Source: Thecamonas trahens ATCC 50062 (Eukaryota > Protista > Apusomonadida). From it: a DNA stretch of 63,434 nucleotides. The notes beneath the pieces were generated by a model, which saw only the letters and a program-made list of their open reading frames with translations, had not been told where the DNA came from and did not search any database. Both the position numbers and the translations under genes were made by a program. Below, one piece after another: positions 25,823-34,753 of this stretch. The first letter of the stretch is position 1, and every line of letters starts with the position of its first letter. The DNA is taken from contig NW_013657679.1 of the NCBI RefSeq assembly GCF_000142905.1, forward strand, positions 510,114 through 573,547. The letters are read 5' to 3'.

Positions 25823-26374
25823 TTACAGGAGTGTGCAACCCTTCTTCTTGGACGAGCTCGACGGGGTGTCGTCGTCGCCGCCGCCGCCGCGGGACGATCG
25901 GATGCGCCGGACAATGGTCTCGAAAATGAGCGTGACATTGGTGTCGGTCTTGGCCGACGACTCGACGTAGTCGGCGTCCCAGAGCTTGGCCTTGGCCTCG
26001 CCGTCTTCCGAGGTCACCACACGGTCGGCCTCGAGATCGATCTTGTTGGCAACGAGCGTGATACACACGGCCCGGTCCTCCAGCGAGCGCTCGATGCGCT
26101 GCCGGATCTCGTCCACGTGTTCAAATGATGCCTGGTTCGTCACATCGTAGACAAGGATAAAGCCCTCGCCGGACTTCATGTACGCGTCGAGCATCGAAGA
26201 GTACCCCTCCTGCCCCGCCGTGTCGAGGATGTCCAGCATGCATGCCTCGTCGTCCACCACCAGCGGCTTTGAGTACGAGTCCTCGATGGTTGGATCGTAC
26301 CGCGCCACAAACTTGCCTTTGATGAATCGGACCGTCAGCGCCGACTTGCCCACTGAGCCGGAGCCCAGCACCGT
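25823..26374 (-). CDS. Ras/Rap-family small GTPase (5' exon missing, probably in gap)
   Basis: VLGSGSVGKS, YDPTIEDSY, DTAGQE, NKID, SAK and polybasic KKKGCTLL CAAX. A CAG acceptor at 26377-26375 precedes TVLG; the first few codons are not visible. Confidence 0.93.
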   Translation of the reverse strand, partial: TVLGSGSVGKSALTVRFIKGKFVARYDPTIEDSYSKPLVVDDEACMLDILDTAGQEGYSSMLDAYMKSGEGFILVYDVTNQASFEHVDEIRQRIERSLEDRAVCITLVANKIDLEADRVVTSEDGEAKAKLWDADYVESSAKTDTNVTLIFETIVRRIRSSRGGGGDDDTPSSSSKKKGCTLL

Positions 26375-26564: not shown

Positions 26565-27339
26565 NNNNNNNNNNNNNNNNNNNNNNNNNNNNNNNNNNNN
26601 NNNNNNNNNNNNNNNNNNNNNNNNNNNNNNNNNNNNNNNNNNNNNNNNNNNNNNNNNNNNNNNNNNNNNNNNNNNNNNNNNNNNNNNNNNNNNNNNNNNN
26701 NNNNNNNNNNNNNNNNNNNNNNNNNNNNNNNNNNNNNNNNNNNNNNNNNNNNNNNNNNNNNNNNNNNNNNNNNNNNNNNNNNNNNNNNNNNNNNNNNNNN
26801 NNNNNNNNNNNNNNNNNNNNNNNNNNNNNNNNNNNNNNNNNNNNNNNNNNNNNNNNNNNNNNNNNNNNNNNNNNNNNNNNNNNNNNNNNNNNNNNNNNNN
26901 NNNNNNNNNNNNNNNNNNNNNNNNNNNNNNNNNNNNNNNNNNNNNNNNNNNNNNNNNNNNNNNNNNNNNNNNNNNNNNNNNNNNNNNNNNNNNNNNNNNN
27001 NNNNNNNNNNNNNNNNNNNNNNNNNNNNNNNNNNNNNNNNNNNNNNNNNNNNNNNNNNNNNNNNNNNNNNNNNNNNNNNNNNNNNNNNNNNNNNNNNNNN
27101 NNNNNNNNNNNNNNNNNNNNNNNNNNNNNNNNNNNNNNNNNNNNNNNNNNNNNNNNNNNNNNNNNNNNNNNNNNNNNNNNNNNNNNNNNNNNNNNNNNNN
27201 NNNNNNNNNNNNNNNNNNNNNNNNNNNNNNNNNNNNNNNNNNNNNNNNNNNNNNNNNNNNNNNNNNNNNNNNNNNNNNNNNNNNNNNNNNNNNNNNNNNN
27301 NNNNNNNNNNNNNNNNNNNNNNNNNNNNNNNNNNNNNNN
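26565..27339. other. Assembly gap
   Basis: N run. Confidence 1.
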
Positions 27340-27853: not shown

Positions 27854-30070
27854 TCAGAACTCGATGGGCAGGCCATGGGTGTTGAGGTACCAGCCGAGGG
27901 CGGCGACGGCGCCCGAGGCGGCGACGAGCTGGAAGGTGTACTCGGTAGCGTAAAAGGCGAGCGCAGCGACTTCGCCGATCGAGTTGATCTTGAAGCCGTT
28001 GCGCCAGACGCCGCCGTGGATGGCGTTGTGGGCAAAGAGCTCCATGGGGTTGCTGAGCACGACCGAGGGGTTGGCGACAGCGTCCGGGTTCTGAATGTCG
28101 TGGACGAGGATGGCGGCCATGACGGCGTTGGAGGTCTCCTGGTAGAAGACCTCCATGGCGGCAAAGAAGCGGAAGCCGCCGTACGCGGCGGCGAAGGACT
28201 TGTTGTCGACAACGGACTTGGTGGCGGTCGAAGGGGCAACGTGCTTGGAGACCGGGGTGTTCATCTCGGTGCGGGCGACGACAGCGCGGGCCTGCTGGAT
28301 GGTCTTGGCGAGGGCGTAGTTGGGGCCCTGCGCGGTGACGACGCCGTCGCAAATGGCGTACTCGGTGCCGTCGTCGCCGACAAAGAGCGGGAGCGCGTTG
28401 GAGACGAGCTTCTTGCCAAAGGTGAGGCCGCGGACGAGGCGCTGCCACATCGGGGCGTTGGCCTCGTTGGCGGCGGCGGCGGCGCGGGCCTCCTTAGGAA
28501 TGACGTAGGTGAGAGTCGGGGTGCAGAGGTAGGCGAGGCGAAGGTTGAGGCCCTCGTCGAGGAGCGAGGCGACGATGGCGTCCATGGCAAGCGAGACCTG
28601 GACGTGGAGTGCGCCGTGGAGGTAGGCGTACGAGCCGATGGTGAGCTCGCGCTTGGAGAACTCGGCGTTGATCCAGTTGCGGATCTCAGGCGTCTGGGTG
28701 AAGAGGTTGCAGCCTGCGGCGGCGGCGAGCTCGCCTTCGTCGGCGCACTCGGACGCCGGCCGCGAGAGCGGGTAAAACATGCGACCGGGCGAGTTGCGGG
28801 CGATGGAGAAGAGGCGCTTCCAGATGCCCGGGCGGTCAAGATCGATGGCGATGATGTTGGCGCCCATAGCCATGAGCTGGAGGAGCGGGCCCATGGCCGA
28901 GCCGGCGCCGAGGAGGACAAAGTACTTGTCAGAGAGATCCATCCACTCGGGGTTGTCGGCGACGGCCTCGATGGCCTCGGCGGCGTCGGCCTCGATGGTC
29001 CCGGCCTCGACCCACTTGCGGAGCTGGTCCTTGAGCGCCTGTCCACTCAGCGTCCCGGTCTTGTACGGGACCTCGAGGACGCCGGAGCCCTTGGGCGCCT
29101 CGCCCTCGACCACACCGGTGTAGAACGAGTCGGCAAAGCGGCCGTCCATGGCCTCGGCCAGGGTGAAGGTCTGCCCGTCGCGCACAAACTCAAACGTCGA
29201 GTGAGCGCGGCGGAGGAGGGCCTTGGAGATGGAGACCGCAGACTTCTTCGACTTGCAGCAGAGCTGGACCATGCGGAGCAGGTGCTGCGGGTACGAGAAG
29301 CGCCAGCCGCGGTCGCCGCGGATGGCCGCCGCCGCCTCCGCGTCCTGCACCTCGACCGCTGTCGAGAAAATGTCCTTGCACGCCGCCGTCGTCGACCGCT
29401 TGCCCTTGGCATCCTGCGGGAAGAGGAGGCCAGCCGGCGCAGGCGCGGGCTTACCAAAGTTGGCGCGCTTCTTGAACTGACCCTTGCGCTGCTTCTGCAT
29501 GTGGCCAAACATGATCGGGCCGCCCGGCACGTAGAGCGCGAGCAGCGCAAGCGAGATGTAGTACACCGGCACGAGCGTCGGGTCGGCCTTGGTCGTCTTG
29601 AGCGTCGACCAGACCTGGATGAGCTCGCCCGAGATGCCGGTCGGGTACAGGATCATAAACAGCGAGTACCGCGCCCAGAACAGCGCGTACGGCACCTTGT
29701 TCATCGGAAGGTACAGGTTGACGGCGTAGAACGCGTACCGCGGCACCTCCACCAGCGACCACGAGCCGACCATGAGCCACAGCGACCAGTGCTTCTGTGC
29801 CGCAGGGAACGCGTTGGTGTAGCCCCACAGCAGCACAATGCGCGACGCAACCTGCATGGCAGTCGTCACCACCGGCGAGCGCACAAAGCCGATGAGCGAG
29901 TGCACCACCTCGAGCAGCGCCATCGTCTGCGCCACCTTGAGCGCACCCTCGATAACCGGCCACGCCTCCTCGGCCGTCTTGTCCTCAGTCCAGGCCGTCA
30001 CCAGGAGCACAAGCGTGTATGCCCACGCCACCATGGCGATCACATTGTACAGAAACAGGTACGCTGTGTG

Positions 30071-30106
<36 letters not shown>

Positions 30107-30267
30107 TGTGTGTGTTTGTGAGAGTGTGTGAAAAAAAGGAGGAAGGCAACCAGAGGACGGTGTACAGAGTAGCGAGGGGGTGCAGGGGGGTGGCTGGGGG
30201 AGGAAGGTGAAGGGGAGGGGGGGGTGTGGGGGTGTGGGGTGTGTGTGGGGGGTGGCGTACGCTTCAT
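27854..30267 (-). CDS. Very-long-chain 3-hydroxyacyl-CoA dehydratase (HACD/PTPLA/Phs1) fused to an uncharacterised Rossmann/SDR-like domain (2 exons: 30267-30261, 30063-27854)
   Basis: 7-nt first exon ATGAAGC and intron 30260-30064 (GTACGC...CAG) give MKPYLFLYN. PTPLA motifs LLEVVHSLIGFVRSP, QVASR, WSLVEVPRYAFY, WARYSLFMILYPTGISGEL, HMQKQRK. About 520 further residues with LLGAGSAMGP and QGPNYALAK. Confidence 0.92.
30065..30130. repeat. Imperfect (GT)n microsatellite inside HACD intron
   Basis: Directly visible, adjacent to the 3' splice site. Confidence 0.9.
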
Positions 30268-30431: not shown

Positions 30432-31523
30432 CTAGCCCTTGGCGGCCTTAGAGTTGACGAGGACGTACTCGGTGGGTGCGGTCCCAAGCGTGATGACGTC
30501 CTTGGCGCGGAGCTCGTAGTACTTGGCCGGCGGGACGCGGTCGCCATTGACAAACGTGCCGCCGGCCGAGTTGAGGTCAATGATGTACGGTTTGACGGTG
30601 GTGCGGATGACATCCGGCGCGTCACCGGCCTTGGTCACCCTCACTCGGCGGTGCTGGAGGACCGCGTGCTGTGGCGCGACGGTCTGGTGGCCGACGACAA
30701 CGTGCGCGACCCGCGGATCCGAGCCGACCAGAAAGTGCGACTGCGAGCAGACGTAGAGCGGCGCGGTAGCGCCATCATTGTCGCCGTCGTCGTCAAAGAC
30801 AAAGAGCACCCACTTTTTCTTGGGCACAGCCGCATCGTCCGGCTCGACGTACTTTAGCACCACGCCGTTGACCGTGTTGCTCTCGGCCGCCAGCAGGCCG
30901 GACGTGGCCAGATTGGGCTTGACCGCAGCGGCCTTGTCGCCCTCTCCGCCGTTGCCACCCGGGCGTACCTCGTTCTGGGACGGAAGCGGTCCGCCGCCAC
31001 CCCAGTGCGCCCGCAGCGCCTCGCGGGCCTCGGCCTCGCTCACCTGATCAACCCGATCGGCGTCGCGCTCCCTTGACCGCGATCGAGACCGCCCGCCTCC
31101 TGACTTGCTCACCTCGGCAGACGCCGAGCCGCTACCAACTCGCCGCCGCCGCCGCCGCCTGCTGCCCGAGCTGCGGACTCTGTGCCGGCGGGATCTGTGC
31201 GTGTGCGAGCGGCGGGAGCGCGCCCGCGAGCTCGAGTGCGGCTCGGCCCCGGATCCCACCCCAGATCCCCGACCTTCGCCTGTACCCGAGGCCTCAGCCG
31301 ATGAGCTCCGCCGCCGCCTGCGACTGTTCCGCGACCTGCTGTCCTCGCTCTTCCCGCTCCGCCTCCGCCTGCCGTCCTTATCCCGGTGGCGACTGCTCCG
31401 GCTGCTCCGGCTGCTCCGGCTGCTCCGGCTGCTTCGACTGCTCCGGCTGCTCCGCCCCGGCTCGCCGCCCTTGGCCTCGAGAACCTCGTGTCCGAGGCCG
31501 GCCGACTCTGCCATGGCTGCCAT
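30432..31523 (-). CDS. SNIP1: SNIP1/Pml1-like FHA domain protein (RES complex)
   Basis: RS-rich N-terminus; [74 protein letters not shown]...EYVL. Confidence 0.92.
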
Positions 31524-31854
31524 GCCCGACCCTGCCGCGGTGCGGTGGAGCGTGTGGTGTAGCGAGAGAACACAGACCGAAGACCAAGGTCGAGAGGCTG
31601 CTGTCAAAGAGCATGTGCGGTGGCAGTGCGACACTCGCCACTACCCCCCCCCCCCCCCCCCGCCGGCCATCGGTCGCCTTGCACCAACCACCGACAGACA
31701 GCCGACGGCCGACGGCCGACCGACGGCCAGCGGCGACCCCTCCACCTTTCCACCAGAGGCCACCCTCACCCCACTCCTGCACACACATCTACTCCCCCTC
31801 CCCCCCTCCCCCAACCCCAACCCTCTACTCCCCCTACCCCCCACACCCATCGTC

Positions 31855-33297
31855 ATGTCTTCCCCTGACCGTTCAGCACCCGTGGCCGTTCCCGGCGGGG
31901 CGTGGCGTTCGTCGCAAGATTTTCCGTCGTCTGTGGCCTCACCTCCGGGTGGGGCAAGCCCACCAGGACGGCGGGCGTGGCCATCGTCGCCGTCAAAGCA
32001 GGGCTCGCGGAATGGCGAGTCCCGCGGTTGGCGCGACATGCCGCGCAACGAGCCGCGTGACCGTGAGAGAGCCCGTGACGGCCGCTCTGGGGGCGGCCGC
32101 TCCCGGTCGGCCCGCGACAGAGACCGCGGCTCGCGCCGTCGTGGCGACAGAGACCGCGGCGGGAACGACGGCGGCGGCGGCGACAAGCGCCGGTATGGCG
32201 GCCGCGGCTACGGCCGCGACAGAGATCGCAGCTTCCACTCGGTCTCCAACGGCGGCATGTCTGCAGGCTTCCTCTACGACCTTGTCGAGCGGCTCAACGA
32301 GCGCCCGGCGCCTTCGCCCGTCACCTCCGGCCCGTACTCGTACTCACACGAGGCCATTGCCACTTTTTTCTCGCCGCTCGCGGCCTTTCCAGGCTCGGCC
32401 CTCGACGACCCGACTGTCGCCAATCTGTTCCAGGAGCGTGCCCGCGGGCCCGAGTCGTCCAAGGAAATTGAATGGGCCGGCCCGCCGCCGCGGACCCGCC
32501 GCGGCGACGACGGCGACGACGCTCTGCGGGTGAATACCCAAAATGCATGGGGTTCGCGCTCGGCCGTCCAAGAGACGCCGACGCCCACAGCTGACGCCGC
32601 CGACGACGACGGCTGGGAGGTTGTGGGCGCCAAGACCGCACGCAAGAAGGAGGAGCGCGCCGCCGAGCGCGCCGCCGAGCGCGCCGCCGAGCGCGCCGCC
32701 GAGCTTGCCCGCGCCGCGCCCGAGCCGCTGGTTACCGGCTCGCGCCTCGCGGCCGCTGCCGTCGCCGCTACCTCGCCCACCATGACCGGCTCCTCGCCGC
32801 CAACCGTCTCGGTCGAGACGAGTCTCTCGTCGTCGCCGCCGTCCGTCGCCGCCATCGCCGCTTCGGGCGCTCTACCCTCCCCGGCCGCCCTCGGCTCGCC
32901 GGCCTTTGCCGCCGCCGCTGCCGGCAACTTCCACCCTGCGCTTGCCCCGGCCAGCTACCACTCGCTCCAGTGGCGGTACGTTGACCCATCGGGCAACGTC
33001 CAGGGGCCGTTCCCGTCGTCGCGCATGCATGACTGGGCCGAGGCCGGTGCCTTTAACGCCGTCGACGACCTGCAGCTGCAGCGTTGCGACAACGGCGCCT
33101 CTGCCTTCCTCTCCCAGCTCATGTACGAGCGCAAGACGCCGTTCAACCCTCAGCACCCCATCTACCACCTCCACACCCAGGCGGCGATCCAGGCCAAGGC
33201 GCAGGCTCAGGCGCAGGCACTTGCCCAGGCGCAGGCTCAGGCGCAGGCTCAGGCGCAGGCGCAGGCTCAGGCGCAGGCGCAGGCTCAGGCTCAGGCG

Positions 33298-33341
<44 letters not shown>

Positions 33342-34753
33342 CGCGCTCATGCAGCACCAGGCGCAGCAGCGCCAGGCGCAGCAGCTCCAGGCGCAGCAGC
33401 AGGCTGCCCAGCAGGCACTCCTCCGTGCGCAGCAAGTCAAGCAGCAGGCCAAGGCCGAGGCAGCCGCCGCCCGCGAGCAGGCCCAGCGTCGTGCCGATGA
33501 AGAGCGCGTCCGCGCCGCCGCCAAGACCTCGTCAGGCCGCGAGTCGGGCTCGGCCTGGGCAACTGCCGACGCCGAGCGCCAGAAGCGTCAGGCCGCAGTC
33601 AACCTCCGCCACGCGCAGGCGCAGGCCAAGGCGCAGGCCAAGGCGCAGGCTCAGGCGCAGGCTCGTGCGCAAGCTCAAGCGCAGGCTCAGGCGCAGCAGC
33701 AAGCCCGAGTCGCCGCTGCTGCCATCAAAGCTGAGCCGGCCATGACTTTTGCCGAGATCCAGGAGCAGCAGGCGGCTTGGGAGGCCCAGCGCCGTGCCCA
33801 GGCCGAGGCCGAGGCTGCCCGCAAGCGCGAGGAGGACCGCCTTCACAAGAAGCTGGGTTGGAAGGGCGGTGCTGGTGCGCAGCGCAGCGGGAGCGGCCTC
33901 TCGCTCCGCGAAATCCAGGAGCAGCAGGCGGCCATCGACGCCGCACGGGCGGCCAAGGCGCGCCCGGTCAAGACCGGCATGTTTGGCCGGGCCGGGCCGA
34001 CGCCCGCTGCGGGCTCGGGGCGGCGCAACAAGTCGCTCCTGGAGATCCAGGCCGAGCAGGAGGCGCTCGAGGCGAAGCGCGCCGAGGCGACCCGTCGCCA
34101 GGCCTCCGCCCGCGCTGCGGCCCGGCCAGCCCCGGTTGCGGGCGCCCCCCGGCTACGGCTCGGCCGGCGCCGTGGCCAAGTTCCACTCGATCCGCGCCAT
34201 GCTCGATTGATAGTTAAGGAGGTAAGTCGTTTNNNNNNNNNNNNNNNNNNNNNNNNNNNNNNNNNNNNNNNNNNNNNNNNNNNNNNNNNNNNNNNNNNNN
34301 NNNNNNNNNNNNNNNNNNNNNNNNNNNNNNNNNNNNNNNNNNNNNNNNNNNNNNNNNNNNNNNNNNNNNNNNNNNNNNNNNNNNNNNNNNNNNNNNNNNN
34401 NNNNNNNTTGCCGCCGCCGGGCGGGACCGGACGGGCGCTCCGGCTCCGGCGGTTGGGCTAGCACCGCCGCCGCGCCCAAGAAGGACCCACTCGACGATCT
34501 TGACCGCCCTTCGCCTGCCACCCTCAACTGGTTCGCCGGGCAGATGCGCCGGCTGACCGGTGACGACAGCACCGACATTCTCAACACGCTGTGGTCAATC
34601 GAGACGCCTGCCCAGATGCGGGAGATTCTTGTGGCCGCCGTCGGGCAAGACGGCGCCCCGCTCGCCAAGCAGCTCATCAAGCGTCGGACCAAGGACCGCA
34701 AGTCGATCGTCTCGCTCGGCTCGGCGACGTCGGCCCGCAAGCAGCGCCGGTAA
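31855..34753 (+). CDS. GYF domain protein, GIGYF/Smy2-like (interrupted by gap 34233-34407)
   Basis: [28 protein letters not shown] (GYF domain), YSYSHEAI (4E-binding-like), AQ repeats and SL(R/L)EIQ motifs. A C-terminal helical segment after the gap ends at TAA 34753. Confidence 0.8.
33196..33340 (+). repeat. Coding (GCKCAG)n repeat encoding poly-AQ
   Basis: GCGCAG/GCTCAG units inside the GYF gene. Confidence 0.9.
34233..34407. other. Assembly gap
   Basis: N run. Confidence 1.

What the first reader, a model, noticed from the sequence alone, without database searches (positions are those of the whole stretch)
27854..30267. Fatty-acid elongase dehydratase (HACD/Phs1) fused to an uncharacterised SDR-like oxidoreductase: candidate bifunctional elongation enzyme
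Seen: an intact HACD domain with the catalytic Tyr/Glu in LYPTGISGE continues in frame into about 520 more residues. These carry a glycine-rich dinucleotide-binding motif (FVLLGAGSAMGP, ~28887-28920), an acidic residue ending the next strand (IIAIDL), a YxxxK motif (QGPNYALAK, ~28304-28318), an SDR-like VAPSTAT strand and a hydrophobic C-terminus. Known: HACD is normally a stand-alone ~220-aa ER protein acting between the ketoacyl-CoA reductase (an SDR) and the enoyl-CoA reductase. Inference: the fused domain is an unassigned NAD(H)-dependent reductase, more likely keto- than enoyl-type given YxxxK, channelled with the dehydratase. The fusion would assign a lipid-elongation role to a family I recall only as bacterial/protist hypothetical proteins (unverified).
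Basis: partly seen in the sequence, partly recalled or inferred. Interest (0 to 1): 0.82.

Follow-up and report, generated by a model that had tools for sequence, protein, structure and literature searches.

The report
Fatty-acid dehydratase fused to unnamed reductase
The only fatty-acid-elongation dehydratase gene of the protist Thecamonas trahens is fused to a 520-residue domain with a reductase-type (SDR) fold that belongs to a large unnamed family; the same fusion occurs across most eukaryotic supergroups, which ties that family to fatty-acid elongation.

Summary
One reading frame on the minus strand (27854-30063, plus a 7-base first exon at 30261-30267) encodes an intact HACD/PTPLA dehydratase followed by about 520 residues (domain X here) with no Pfam, NCBIfam or PDB sequence match. 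The junction is coding: dN/dS is 0.21 against an intronless marine relative. HACD-X proteins occur in diatoms, a haptophyte, a pelagophyte, a chlorarachniophyte, Arcella and a choanoflagellate. Dinoflagellates carry the reverse order, X-HACD. Free-standing X occurs in Carpediemonas and in at least 599 bacterial species, including many Acinetobacter.

AlphaFold (pLDDT 88) gives X an SDR/Rossmann core (Z 15-16.7 to ketoreductases and the yeast FAS ketoreductase region). It also has a family-specific helical N-subdomain and a C-terminal anchor helix. Tyr385 is invariant, Lys389 is 97% conserved, and Thr/Ser follows strand 5 in 98% of members. Asp210 predicts NAD(H).

The SDR-fold reading is supported. 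The reaction is not settled. My best guess (0.42) is 3-oxoacyl-CoA/3-hydroxyacyl-CoA interconversion next to HACD. A canonical KAR is also present, so X is not a replacement for a missing KAR. No clear canonical TECR was found, so enoyl reduction remains a serious rival. I found no paper describing this domain.

Earlier notes of this scan on other pieces of this genome had named the organism; I confirmed that here.

The parts
30261..30267 (-). Proposed exon 1: ATG AAG C (Met-Lys plus the first base of codon 3), preceded by ACC
   Evidence: Sequence read. The relative P0002 starts MKAYLFLYNV. Length arithmetic gives 738 aa, the same as P0002. This is inferred; no RNA data were available.
30064..30260 (-). 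Proposed 197-base intron, GTACGC...CACAG, mostly (CA)n/(CAAA) microsatellite
   Evidence: the KAR gene of the same genome has donor GTACGT and acceptor CAG. Inferred.
27854..30063 (-). Exon 2: rest of the HACD-X coding sequence including the stop codon (27854-27856)
   Evidence: Open frame. The public gene call P0001 (726 aa, from the internal Met) is 100% identical.
29471..30063 (-). HACD (PTPLA) module: first transmembrane helix YLFLYNVIAMVAWAYTLVLLV, then the Pfam PTPLA match (29471-29929)
   Evidence: Pfam E 4.2e-46. A family profile hits C. elegans HACD hpo-8 (22of_B) at E 1.3e-52. It is the only PTPLA locus in the genome.
29624..29650 (-). HACD catalytic motif LYPTGISGE (Tyr and Glu seven residues apart)
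   Evidence: for coordinates. The equivalents, Y142/E149 of CeHACD and Y149/E156 of yeast Phs1, are catalytic (PMC13464631).
29429..29506 (-). Junction between the last HACD helix and X (GHMQKQRKGQFKKRANFGKPAPAPAG)
   Evidence: dN/dS 0.21 over 55 codons against L137. Free-standing X proteins start just after it.
28940..29443 (-). X N-terminal subdomain (X residues 10-177): four long helices plus small hairpins. It carries the GxxFP..GxRSTT motif, W56, R57, invariant Y60, W153 and E160.
   Evidence: Models (pLDDT >90 here; pLDDT 93). Alone it has no fold match (best Z 5.6). Conservation.
27986..28939 (-). X catalytic core (X residues 178-495): SDR/Rossmann fold with an insertion of about 60 residues between strand 5 and the Tyr helix
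   Evidence: classical SDRs give Z 15-16, about 225 residues aligned at rmsd about 3 A over model residues 175-495; yeast FAS alpha 2uv8_A gives Z 16.7 with 307 aligned. One search gives the Foldseek hits.
28886..28921 (-). Glycine-rich dinucleotide-binding loop FVLLGAGSAMGP after strand 1 (G188 100%, A189 96%, G194 87%, P195 97%)
28841..28843 (-). Asp210 at the end of strand 2, the predicted NAD(H) over NADP(H) determinant
   Evidence: Asp in 115 of 137 members; the others have Ala/Ser/Gly there, with Arg at the next one to three positions in the variants listed (ARGS, ATRR, ARCG, GRRN). The cofactor preference is inferred from the general SDR rule.
28514..28522 (-). Thr317-Pro318-Thr319 directly after strand 5, the candidate equivalent of the SDR catalytic Ser
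   Evidence: Thr/Ser 98%, Pro 96%, Thr/Ser 93%. Placement comes from the order of secondary-structure elements, not from a residue-level superposition.
28304..28318 (-). Tyr385-x3-Lys389 at the N-terminus of the helix before strand 6 (QGPNYALAK)
   Evidence: Tyr in 137 of 137 members, Lys in 133 of 137. Topology.
28220..28240 (-). VAPSTAT after strand 6, the counterpart of the SDR 'PG...T' segment (P413 96%, T417 98%, S419 99%)
27857..27985 (-). C-terminal amphipathic helix plus a moderately hydrophobic helix (X residues 496-538), the probable membrane anchor
   Evidence: Helices 495-510 and 512-532. Homologues have strongly hydrophobic tails. In X-HACD proteins this helix runs straight into HACD helix 1.

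Best explanation
The gene encodes one ER-membrane protein with two catalytic modules.

The first 200 or so residues are a complete six-helix 3-hydroxyacyl-CoA dehydratase (HACD/Phs1), the only one in the genome. [quoted passage not shown]

The remaining 520 or so residues (X) form a cytosolic oxidoreductase held at the membrane surface by its last helix. X has an SDR-type Rossmann core that binds NAD(H), a Thr/Ser-Tyr-Lys catalytic set, and a family-specific helical cap.

The most likely reaction is interconversion of 3-oxoacyl-CoA and (3R)-3-hydroxyacyl-CoA. That is the step adjacent to HACD: step 2 of elongation, or the same two steps run backwards as in peroxisomal multifunctional enzyme 2. 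The intermediate would pass directly between the two active sites.

Shown here: the fusion, its conservation, the fold, the conserved residues, and the functional link to HACD. Inferred: cofactor, substrate and direction.
For: Fusion and coding continuity.

Functional link to HACD:
- PTPLA is the only recurrent fusion partner among the homologues scanned. P0245 additionally carries a polycystin-channel domain.
- The best 150 cluster representatives comprise 31 HACD-X, 12 X-HACD and 107 free X.
- The X-HACD proteins form one clade (support 99) nested among HACD-X proteins, so the two domains were joined at least twice.
- In both orders X sits immediately next to a membrane helix.

Fold: the model has pLDDT 88.3 and pTM 0.87. 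Foldseek's best hits are fungal FAS alpha chains including the 'ketoacyl reductase domain and 4 helical bundle' entry, followed by classical SDRs. VIA gives Z 16.7 to 2uv8_A and Z 15-16 to many ketoreductases and FabG-type enzymes.

Active site: Tyr385 100%, Lys389 97%, Thr/Ser317 98%, Asp297 97% and Gly188 100% over 137 bacterial and eukaryotic members.

Real cofactor site: where Asp210 is lost, Arg follows it, which is the usual NAD-to-NADP switch.

The window's copy is not degenerate. It deviates at 8 of 86 conserved columns, against a family median of 6.

Tyr-x3-Lys with an upstream Ser/Thr is the signature of carbonyl/alcohol SDRs. SDR-type enoyl reductases use other spacings. This last point is established knowledge of the SDR superfamily, not tested here.
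Against: - The genome has an intact canonical KAR (G000:C19; L127:733-1533 plus an upstream exon). Its relatives are named very-long-chain 3-oxoacyl-CoA reductase at about 50% identity. A second ketoreductase is therefore not obviously needed.
- No clear canonical TECR was found. TECR_N (PF21696) has no hit, and all three Steroid_dh paralogues are nearer to SRD5A than to C. elegans TECR. This fits an enoyl-reductase role for X.
- In animals HACD forms its stable complex with TECR, not with KAR (PMC13464631).
- The elongation KAR uses NADPH, whereas X looks NAD(H)-specific.
- Bacteria with free X have neither ELO nor HACD, and no conserved gene neighbourhood points to a substrate.
- There is no sequence-profile similarity to the KAR family (hhalign probability 0.5%).
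- Residue equivalences with SDR catalytic residues rest on the order of secondary-structure elements, not on a superposition.
Confidence: 0.42

Rival explanations
1. X is the trans-2-enoyl-CoA reductase of the elongation cycle (step 4). Fused to HACD, it would take over the dehydratase's product, as TECR does in animals. In Thecamonas it would stand in for a missing TECR.
For: - No TECR_N domain in the genome.
- The three Steroid_dh paralogues match SRD5A-type proteins better than C. elegans TECR: L004 gives 2.7e-20 against 4e-8, L003 gives 6.5e-53 against 1.4e-6, and L005 gives no TECR hit. Atlas neighbours of L004 are SRD5A clusters.
- A canonical KAR is present, so step 2 is already covered.
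- HACD pairs physically with the enoyl reductase in C. elegans and human (PMC13464631).
- Peroxisomal 2,4-dienoyl-CoA reductase is among the top structural matches (4fc6_A, Z 15.8).
Against: - The conserved Thr/Ser-Tyr-x3-Lys set is typical of carbonyl reductases. Known SDR-type enoyl reductases (FabI, FabL, FabV, InhA) have Tyr-x6/8-Lys spacing and no catalytic Ser (established knowledge, not tested here).
- A diatom transcriptome study lists KCR, HACD and TER together (PMC8401676), so X-bearing diatoms apparently keep a TECR.
- The assembly is fragmentary (131 contigs with gaps), so absence of TECR is not proven.
- L004 might do TECR's job.
Confidence: 0.22
2. X is an oxidoreductase for another lipid carbonyl or thioester, for example a fatty aldehyde, an acyl-CoA reduced to an alcohol, or a long-chain keto or hydroxy lipid. 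It would act on products of elongation rather than within the cycle.
For: - Free X is common in bacteria that lack the ELO/HACD system. These include Acinetobacter, Marinobacter, Chloroflexus and Myxococcus. That several of these are known wax-ester or unusual-lipid producers is my own knowledge, not tested.
- Structural matches include the thioester-reducing SDRs malonyl-CoA reductase (Z about 15) and, more weakly by Foldseek, the carboxylic acid reductase R domain.
- The genome already has a KAR.
Against: - Fusion exclusively with HACD, in both orders and in many supergroups, argues for a step that shares an intermediate with HACD.
- No bacterial neighbourhood links X to wax-ester or alcohol genes.
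Confidence: 0.2
3. X binds a dinucleotide but is not a catalyst. It would act as a redox sensor or as a scaffold that organises the elongase complex around HACD.
For: Other elongase subunits carry non-catalytic cytosolic domains: the CS domain of HACD3 and the ubiquitin-like domain of TECR (my own knowledge; PF21696 does exist). No activity has been shown for any member.
Against: - Tyr385 is invariant and Lys389, Thr/Ser317 and Asp297 are near-invariant across bacteria and eukaryotes.
- Free-standing bacterial members have no elongase to organise.
- dN/dS for X is 0.38.
Confidence: 0.08
4. Two separate neighbouring genes, or an intron, are read through by chance in GC-rich DNA, so there is no fusion protein.
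For: The window is about 65% GC, where long spurious open frames are common (one search shows many). No RNA data exist for this locus.
Against: - The junction is under purifying selection in frame (dN/dS 0.21).
- The intronless relative has one 738-codon ORF.
- Complete transcripts of 735-781 residues from other species span both domains.
- 124 of 299 retrieved homologues are HACD-X.
Confidence: 0.02

Closest known systems
HACD / Phs1 / PAS2 3-hydroxyacyl-CoA dehydratases (Pfam PF04387, PTPLA)
   Same: The N-terminal module is a full member. It gives a full-length Pfam match, has the LYPxGxxGE Tyr/Glu motif, and its hydrophobic helices are in the expected places. It is the only copy in the genome.
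   Different: Model-organism HACDs stop after the sixth helix (HACD3 instead has an N-terminal CS domain). This protein continues into a 520-residue oxidoreductase-like domain.
Classical SDR ketoreductases: FabG, and the elongase KAR (HSD17B12 / Ifa38 / KCR1)
   Same: Same Rossmann-type fold (Z 15-16). X has a glycine-rich loop after strand 1, Tyr-x3-Lys at the start of the helix before strand 6, and a hydroxyl residue after strand 5.
   Different: There is no detectable sequence or profile similarity (no Pfam adh_short or KR hit; hhalign probability 0.5% against the KAR family). X has an extra 170-residue helical subdomain and an insertion of about 60 residues before the Tyr helix. It has Asp instead of a basic residue after strand 2, and its anchor is C-terminal rather than N-terminal. 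The genome has its own canonical KAR.
Ketoreductase region of fungal type I fatty acid synthase alpha chain (2uv8_A, 6u5v_A, 9d4a)
   Same: It is the best Foldseek and VIA match and covers the most residues (307, model 9-514). It also combines an SDR core with adjoining helices.
   Different: Z 16.7 is tied with plain SDRs. The N-subdomain alone does not find FAS (best Z 5.6 to unrelated helical proteins). Identity is 10-12%. The FAS ketoreductase uses NADPH and ACP-bound substrates.
Peroxisomal multifunctional enzyme type 2 (HSD17B4 / Fox2)
   Same: One polypeptide joins an NAD-dependent SDR acting on (3R)-hydroxyacyl-CoA to the enzyme that interconverts (3R)-hydroxyacyl-CoA and trans-2-enoyl-CoA. 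This is the same pair of reactions proposed here.
   Different: In MFE-2 the hydratase is a soluble hot-dog fold, not a membrane HACD, and the protein is peroxisomal and catabolic. The resemblance is one of logic, not of homology.
TECR / Tsc13 trans-2-enoyl-CoA reductase
   Same: It is a physical partner of HACD in animals and the next enzyme in the cycle. X could play the same positional role.
   Different: TECR is a polytopic Steroid_dh-family membrane protein with a ubiquitin-like N-domain. X has an unrelated fold.

Membership tests
HACD / PTPLA (PF04387) | Profile match above the curated cut-off over the whole domain | tested here: met
   157 bits against a cut-off of 27, profile positions 1-161 of 162. 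A family profile matches C. elegans HACD at E 1.3e-52.
HACD / PTPLA (PF04387) | Catalytic Tyr and Glu seven residues apart in the fifth helix | tested here: met
   LYPTGISGE at 29624-29650. Role of these residues from PMC13464631.
HACD / PTPLA (PF04387) | Dehydratase activity on (3R)-3-hydroxyacyl-CoA | not testable with these tools
   Needs an enzyme assay or complementation of yeast phs1.
SDR superfamily (fold level) | Rossmann-type alpha/beta fold with the SDR strand order | tested here: met
   Model pLDDT 88.3. More than 40 SDR structures match at Z 14.7-16.0 with about 215-238 residues aligned at rmsd about 3 A.
SDR superfamily (fold level) | Glycine-rich dinucleotide loop after strand 1 | tested here: met
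   G188 100%, A189 96%, G194 87%, P195 97%, directly after strand 183-187.
SDR superfamily (fold level) | Tyr-x3-Lys at the start of the helix preceding strand 6 | tested here: met
   Tyr385 in 137 of 137 members and Lys389 in 133 of 137. The helix spans 383-402 and is followed by strand 407-411.
SDR superfamily (fold level) | Catalytic Ser (or Thr) at the end of strand 5 | tested here: inconclusive
   Thr/Ser317 (98%) and Thr/Ser319 (93%) follow strand 310-316. About 60 inserted residues separate them from the Tyr, and no residue-level superposition was available.
SDR superfamily (sequence families adh_short PF00106 / KR PF08659) | Match to a curated SDR sequence profile | tested here: not met
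   No Pfam hit even at E 10. No NCBIfam hit. No PDB sequence hit with either the sequence or a profile. hhalign against the KAR family gives probability 0.5%.
Elongase 3-ketoacyl-CoA reductase (KAR / HSD17B12 / Ifa38) | Orthology to the KAR clade | tested here: not met
   The KAR orthologue of this genome is a different gene (L127). X shows no sequence similarity to it.
Elongase 3-ketoacyl-CoA reductase (KAR / HSD17B12 / Ifa38) | NADPH-dependent reduction of 3-oxoacyl-CoA | not testable with these tools
   Needs an assay. Asp210 suggests NAD(H) rather than NADPH (inference).
FAS/PKS-type ketoreductase (structural plus catalytic subdomain) | N-terminal structural subdomain homologous to that of FAS/PKS ketoreductases | tested here: inconclusive
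   The whole model aligns over 9-514 to yeast FAS alpha (307 residues) and over 31-504 to PlmKR1. The subdomain modelled alone finds nothing above Z 5.6.
TECR / Steroid_dh (PF02544) | Steroid_dh membrane domain | tested here: not met
   No PF02544 match in the protein.

The most novel reading that the evidence does not exclude
X is an ancient, previously unrecognised class of membrane-associated NAD(H)-dependent acyl-CoA oxidoreductase. It would have been part of the elongase of early eukaryotes and was lost from animals, fungi and land plants, which is why it was never studied. In protists it would supply a second, NADH-driven reductive step (keto or enoyl) hard-wired to HACD. Its bacterial relatives, including those of Acinetobacter, would carry out the same reaction on free acyl-CoA.
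Probability: 0.3. Interest if true: 0.8.

Novelty: new variant of a known kind. Interest (0 to 1): 0.66.

Why it matters
The four-enzyme elongation cycle (ELO, KAR, HACD, TECR) is treated as universal in eukaryotes. This work shows that in much of eukaryotic diversity the dehydratase carries a fifth, oxidoreductase-like module that no database names. The groups concerned are diatoms, haptophytes, pelagophytes, chlorarachniophytes, dinoflagellates, amoebae, a choanoflagellate and an apusomonad. [quoted passage not shown]

The two independent fusions give a testable functional context to a family of about 1,800 sequence clusters. That family also occurs in at least 599 bacterial species, including many Acinetobacter species. 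If X is a reductase of the cycle, pathway reconstructions and engineering of algal lipid synthesis are missing a component. If it runs the steps backwards, it would be a membrane-bound counterpart of multifunctional enzyme 2.

Tried and rejected
- **Sequence-family assignment of X failed.** Pfam at E 10, NCBIfam, and PDB searches with the sequence and with a profile found nothing.
- **hhalign against a KAR-family alignment found nothing.** Probability was 0.5%, so I could not map catalytic residues by profile alignment.
- **Bacterial gene neighbourhoods gave no clue.**
  - Two look-ups and clustering of neighbours in 80 loci were run.
  - A Pfam scan of adjacent same-strand genes found only unrelated neighbours: ferredoxin-reductase-like, EamA, alpha/beta hydrolase, STAS, LysR and YkuD.
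  - No neighbour is conserved across phyla. A phaC-phasin pair 2 kb away in Marinobacter mobilis was not seen in the other loci examined.
- **The N-terminal subdomain modelled alone has no significant fold match**. I therefore dropped the idea that it independently proves a FAS/PKS-type ketoreductase architecture.
- **'X replaces a missing KAR' is rejected.** A canonical KAR is present and intact.
- **'The window's copy is degenerating' is rejected.** It deviates from the family at W394A, D320L, N410H, R390T and others, but 8 deviations in 86 conserved columns is ordinary for the family.
- **An ELO gene in a 681-residue open frame (L007) is not another fusion.** Only the ELO domain is recognisable.
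- **Five literature searches found no description of the fusion or of the X family**.
- **The first Atlas query failed** because the service was busy. A bacterial member later returned only 'hypothetical protein' clusters without Pfam.
- **The IQ-TREE search did not finish in time**. The tree cited is FastTree with SH-like support and a midpoint root, so it gives no direction of transfer.
Full report
**What is in the sequence**

On the minus strand an open frame runs from 30394 to the stop at 27854-27856. Pfam finds one domain, PTPLA/HACD (PF04387), at E 4.2e-46 over profile positions 1-161 of 162. This corresponds to 29471-29929.

The HACD helix-1 motif YLFLYN begins right after a (CA)n tract ending in CAG at 30064. 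Upstream, ACC ATG AAG C|GTACGC lies at 30261-30267. Reading ATGAAGC as exon 1 and 30064-30260 as an intron gives Met-Lys-Pro-Tyr-Leu-Phe-Leu-Tyr-Asn. The coding length is then 7 + 2210 = 2217 bases, or 738 codons plus stop.

A 72%-identical, intronless relative from a marine metagenome (P0002, locus L137) begins MKAYLFLYNV and is also 738 residues. The KAR gene of the same genome has the same donor type, G|GTACGT, and a CAG acceptor.

The public gene call (P0001, 726 residues) starts at an internal Met and misses the first helix residues.

**The fusion is real**

After the last HACD helix the frame continues for about 540 residues. Against L137, dN/dS is 0.20 for HACD, 0.21 for the 55-codon junction and 0.38 for the rest. 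The junction is therefore translated in this frame.

The word-based protein search with the C-terminal 538 residues found 1119 proteins. Most of the best 120 are 630-785 residues long and carry PF04387. They include complete MMETSP/EukProt transcripts and genome-derived proteins of diatoms (Mayamaea, Cyclotella, Chaetoceros, Seminavis, Nitzschia) and of Arcella.

The exhaustive search found 1798 clusters at E up to 0.001, of which 477 are below 1e-30. Further named HACD-X members come from these species:
- the choanoflagellate Salpingoeca urceolata (complete transcript)
- the haptophyte Prymnesium parvum
- the chlorarachniophyte Amorphochlora
- a pelagophyte

**The reverse order also exists**

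Several proteins of 700-790 residues have X first and PTPLA last (P0122 from a dinoflagellate, P0125, P0131, P0132, P0141, P0146, P0158, P0167). Among the best 150 representatives I count 31 HACD-X, 12 X-HACD and 107 X alone, of which 78 look full-length.

PTPLA is the only recurrent fusion partner. One protein, P0245, also carries a polycystin-channel domain.

In a FastTree tree of 140 X domains, all known bacterial sequences fall in one half and all known eukaryotic sequences in the other. Nine of the ten X-HACD proteins in the tree form one clade (support 99) nested among HACD-X proteins. The two domains were therefore joined at least twice.

In X-HACD proteins the last helix of X runs directly into HACD helix 1 (...LYFLSLVVNFYLGLYN...). 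In HACD-X proteins X ends in its own hydrophobic helix. In both orders the catalytic part of X is tethered right at the membrane, on the side where HACD's N- and C-termini lie.

**Free-standing X**

Free X occurs in the metamonad Carpediemonas, in Marinobacter mobilis and in Acinetobacter rudis. They include many Acinetobacter (among them A. baylyi, A. pittii and A. lwoffii), Myxococcus and Pyxidicoccus, Nanopelagicales and other Actinomycetota, and Chloroflexus and Chloroploca.

These are called 'hypothetical protein' and have no Pfam family. The ESM Atlas neighbours of the Marinobacter protein are likewise unannotated. The gene is mostly on its own, and no neighbour is conserved across phyla.

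**Fold**

AlphaFold2 with a 30-sequence alignment gave mean pLDDT 88.3 and pTM 0.87.

Foldseek's best PDB hits are fungal FAS alpha chains (E 1.8e-4), including the entry described as 'ketoacyl reductase domain and 4 helical bundle'. Classical SDRs follow.

The Foldseek-independent VIA search gave these matches:
- yeast FAS alpha 2uv8_A: Z 16.7, 307 residues aligned, model 9-514
- more than 40 classical SDRs: Z 14.7-16.0, about 215-238 residues aligned, rmsd about 3 A, model about 175-495. They include gluconate 5-dehydrogenases, FabG-type 3-oxoacyl-ACP reductases, carbonyl reductases and peroxisomal dienoyl-CoA reductase.
- a PKS ketoreductase and mycobacterial FAS: Z about 15

These Z values are tied. 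The safe statement is 'SDR fold'.

The first 170 residues, modelled alone (pLDDT 93), find nothing above Z 5.6. They form a family-specific helical subdomain.

**Active-site logic**

The order of elements in the model is as follows:
- strand 1 (183-187), then the glycine-rich loop
- strand 2 (205-209), then Asp210
- strand 3
- strand 4 (276-280)
- a helix (287-305)
- strand 5 (310-316), then Thr-Pro-Thr
- an insertion of about 60 residues
- a helix (383-402) starting with Asn384-Tyr385...Lys389
- strand 6 (407-411), then Ala-Pro-Ser-Thr-x-Thr

This is the SDR order, with the Tyr-x3-Lys and the hydroxyl residue in the expected places.

Conservation over 137 diverse members:

| Residue | Conservation |
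|---|---|
| Gly188 | 100% |
| Tyr385 | 100% |
| Lys389 | 97% (Gln in a small subclade) |
| Thr/Ser317 | 98% |
| Pro318 | 96% |
| Thr/Ser319 | 93% |
| Asp297 | 97% |
| Tyr283 | 97% |
| Tyr60 (N-subdomain) | 100% |

Asp210 is present in 84% of members. Where it is absent, Ala, Ser or Gly takes its place; in the variants listed, Arg follows within one to three positions (ARGS, ATRR, ARCG, GRRN). This is the usual signature of a switch from NAD to NADP, and it argues that the site really binds a dinucleotide.

The window's protein deviates from the consensus at 8 of 86 conserved columns, against a family median of 6. It is not decaying.

There is no detectable sequence-profile relationship to curated SDR families or to KAR. 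The residue equivalences above are therefore inferred from topology, not from a superposition.

**The rest of the pathway in this genome**

The genome is Thecamonas trahens ATCC 50062. A neighbour-independent gene product (P0427) is 100% identical to a protein of that name, which confirms earlier notes of this scan.
- It has one PTPLA locus and one X locus, which are the same gene.
- It has at least eleven ELO loci.
- It has an intact canonical KAR: exon 1 with the membrane helix, then WAVVTGASDGIGK..., Ser-Tyr-Lys present, and relatives named very-long-chain 3-oxoacyl-CoA reductase at about 50% identity.

I found no clear TECR.
- The TECR_N profile has no hit.
- L003 is SRD5A1/2-like, L005 is SRD5A-like in its C-terminal half and has no TECR hit, and L006 is DUF1295.
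- L004 matches a bacterial SRD5A (2.7e-20) better than C. elegans TECR (4e-8), and its Atlas neighbours are SRD5A clusters.

The assembly has 131 contigs with gaps, so this absence is not proof. A diatom study lists KCR, HACD and TER together (PMC8401676).

**Interpretation**

Shown:
- a conserved bifunctional architecture
- an SDR-fold, dinucleotide-binding, probably catalytic domain
- a functional link to HACD through two independent fusions

Inferred: the reaction.

The Thr/Ser-Tyr-x3-Lys pattern favours carbonyl/alcohol chemistry. The only carbonyl/alcohol intermediate next to HACD is the 3-oxo/3-hydroxyacyl-CoA pair. I therefore put 3-oxoacyl-CoA reduction, or the reverse dehydrogenation, first (0.42). 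Asp210 suggests NAD(H). That would make X either an NADH-driven alternative to the NADPH-dependent KAR, or the dehydrogenase half of a membrane-bound analogue of multifunctional enzyme 2.

The presence of KAR, the apparent lack of TECR and the known HACD-TECR partnership in animals (PMC13464631) keep enoyl reduction as a serious rival (0.22). Because bacteria carry free X, a broader lipid-carbonyl or thioester reductase role also stays open (0.20).

**Novelty**

The sequences are public. Some are auto-named 'very-long-chain (3R)-3-hydroxyacyl-CoA dehydratase'. The C-terminal domain has no family name, and five full-text searches found no paper describing it or the fusion. I class it as a new variant of a known kind: a divergent SDR-fold family, and a new architecture of HACD.

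Noticed in passing
window 26570-27330 (approx.): A run of N (assembly gap) lies about 500 bases downstream of the gene's stop codon. Acidic and His-rich low-complexity coding sequence (DQDQ..., DDDD) flanks the gap on the plus strand at 26178 onward.
   Followed up: no
window 30064-30160: A long (CA)n/(CAAA)n microsatellite fills the proposed first intron of the HACD-X gene. The public gene call skips the first exon and starts at an internal Met, losing about 12 N-terminal residues, including the start of helix 1 (YLFLYN).
   Followed up: partly
window 30432-31634 (-): The upstream neighbour on the same strand is an SR/RS-rich protein with a C-terminal FHA-like domain (SNIP1-like). It ends 165 bases before the HACD-X start codon. 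Another first-stage note (s1-754643) covers it.
   Followed up: no
window 31105-34461 (+): A long open frame contains a GYF-like motif ([28 protein letters not shown]) and very long (QA)n and Gln/Ala-rich coiled-coil-like tracts. It is interrupted by an N gap near its end.
   Followed up: no
G000:C19:10600-11800 (L127:733-1830, -): This is the canonical elongase 3-ketoacyl-CoA reductase gene of Thecamonas. It has two exons, with an intron (GTACGT...CAG) inside the codon for the first Val of the WAVVTG motif. The six-frame search sees only exon 2.
   Followed up: yes
G000 (L003, L004, L005, L006): The genome has two SRD5A-like paralogues (L003, L004), a third Steroid_dh gene that is probably a polyprenal reductase (L005), and one DUF1295 gene (L006). 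It has no TECR_N domain and no paralogue whose best match is TECR. Either TECR lies in an assembly gap or step 4 of elongation is done by something else in this organism.
   Followed up: partly
G000:C18:454722-458817 and other contigs (L007-L014): There are at least eleven ELO-family loci in a 28.7 Mb genome, two of them about 2.6 kb apart on opposite strands on contig 18. This is an unusually large elongase set for a small heterotrophic flagellate.
   Followed up: no
L015:13848-16097 (Marinobacter mobilis): The bacterial X gene lies about 2 kb from a PHA synthase (PhaC) and phasin pair on the opposite strand. This was not seen in the other bacterial loci examined, so it is probably coincidence. 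It is worth a look if X proves to make (R)-3-hydroxyacyl-CoA.
   Followed up: partly
P0225, P0263: A small subclade of free-standing X proteins has Gln instead of the conserved Lys (YALAQ). These are possibly inactive or mechanistically altered paralogues.
   Followed up: no
P0245 (1381 aa): One predicted protein combines a polycystin/ion-transport channel domain, a weak PTPLA match and X. It may be a gene-model merger or a further fusion.
   Followed up: no
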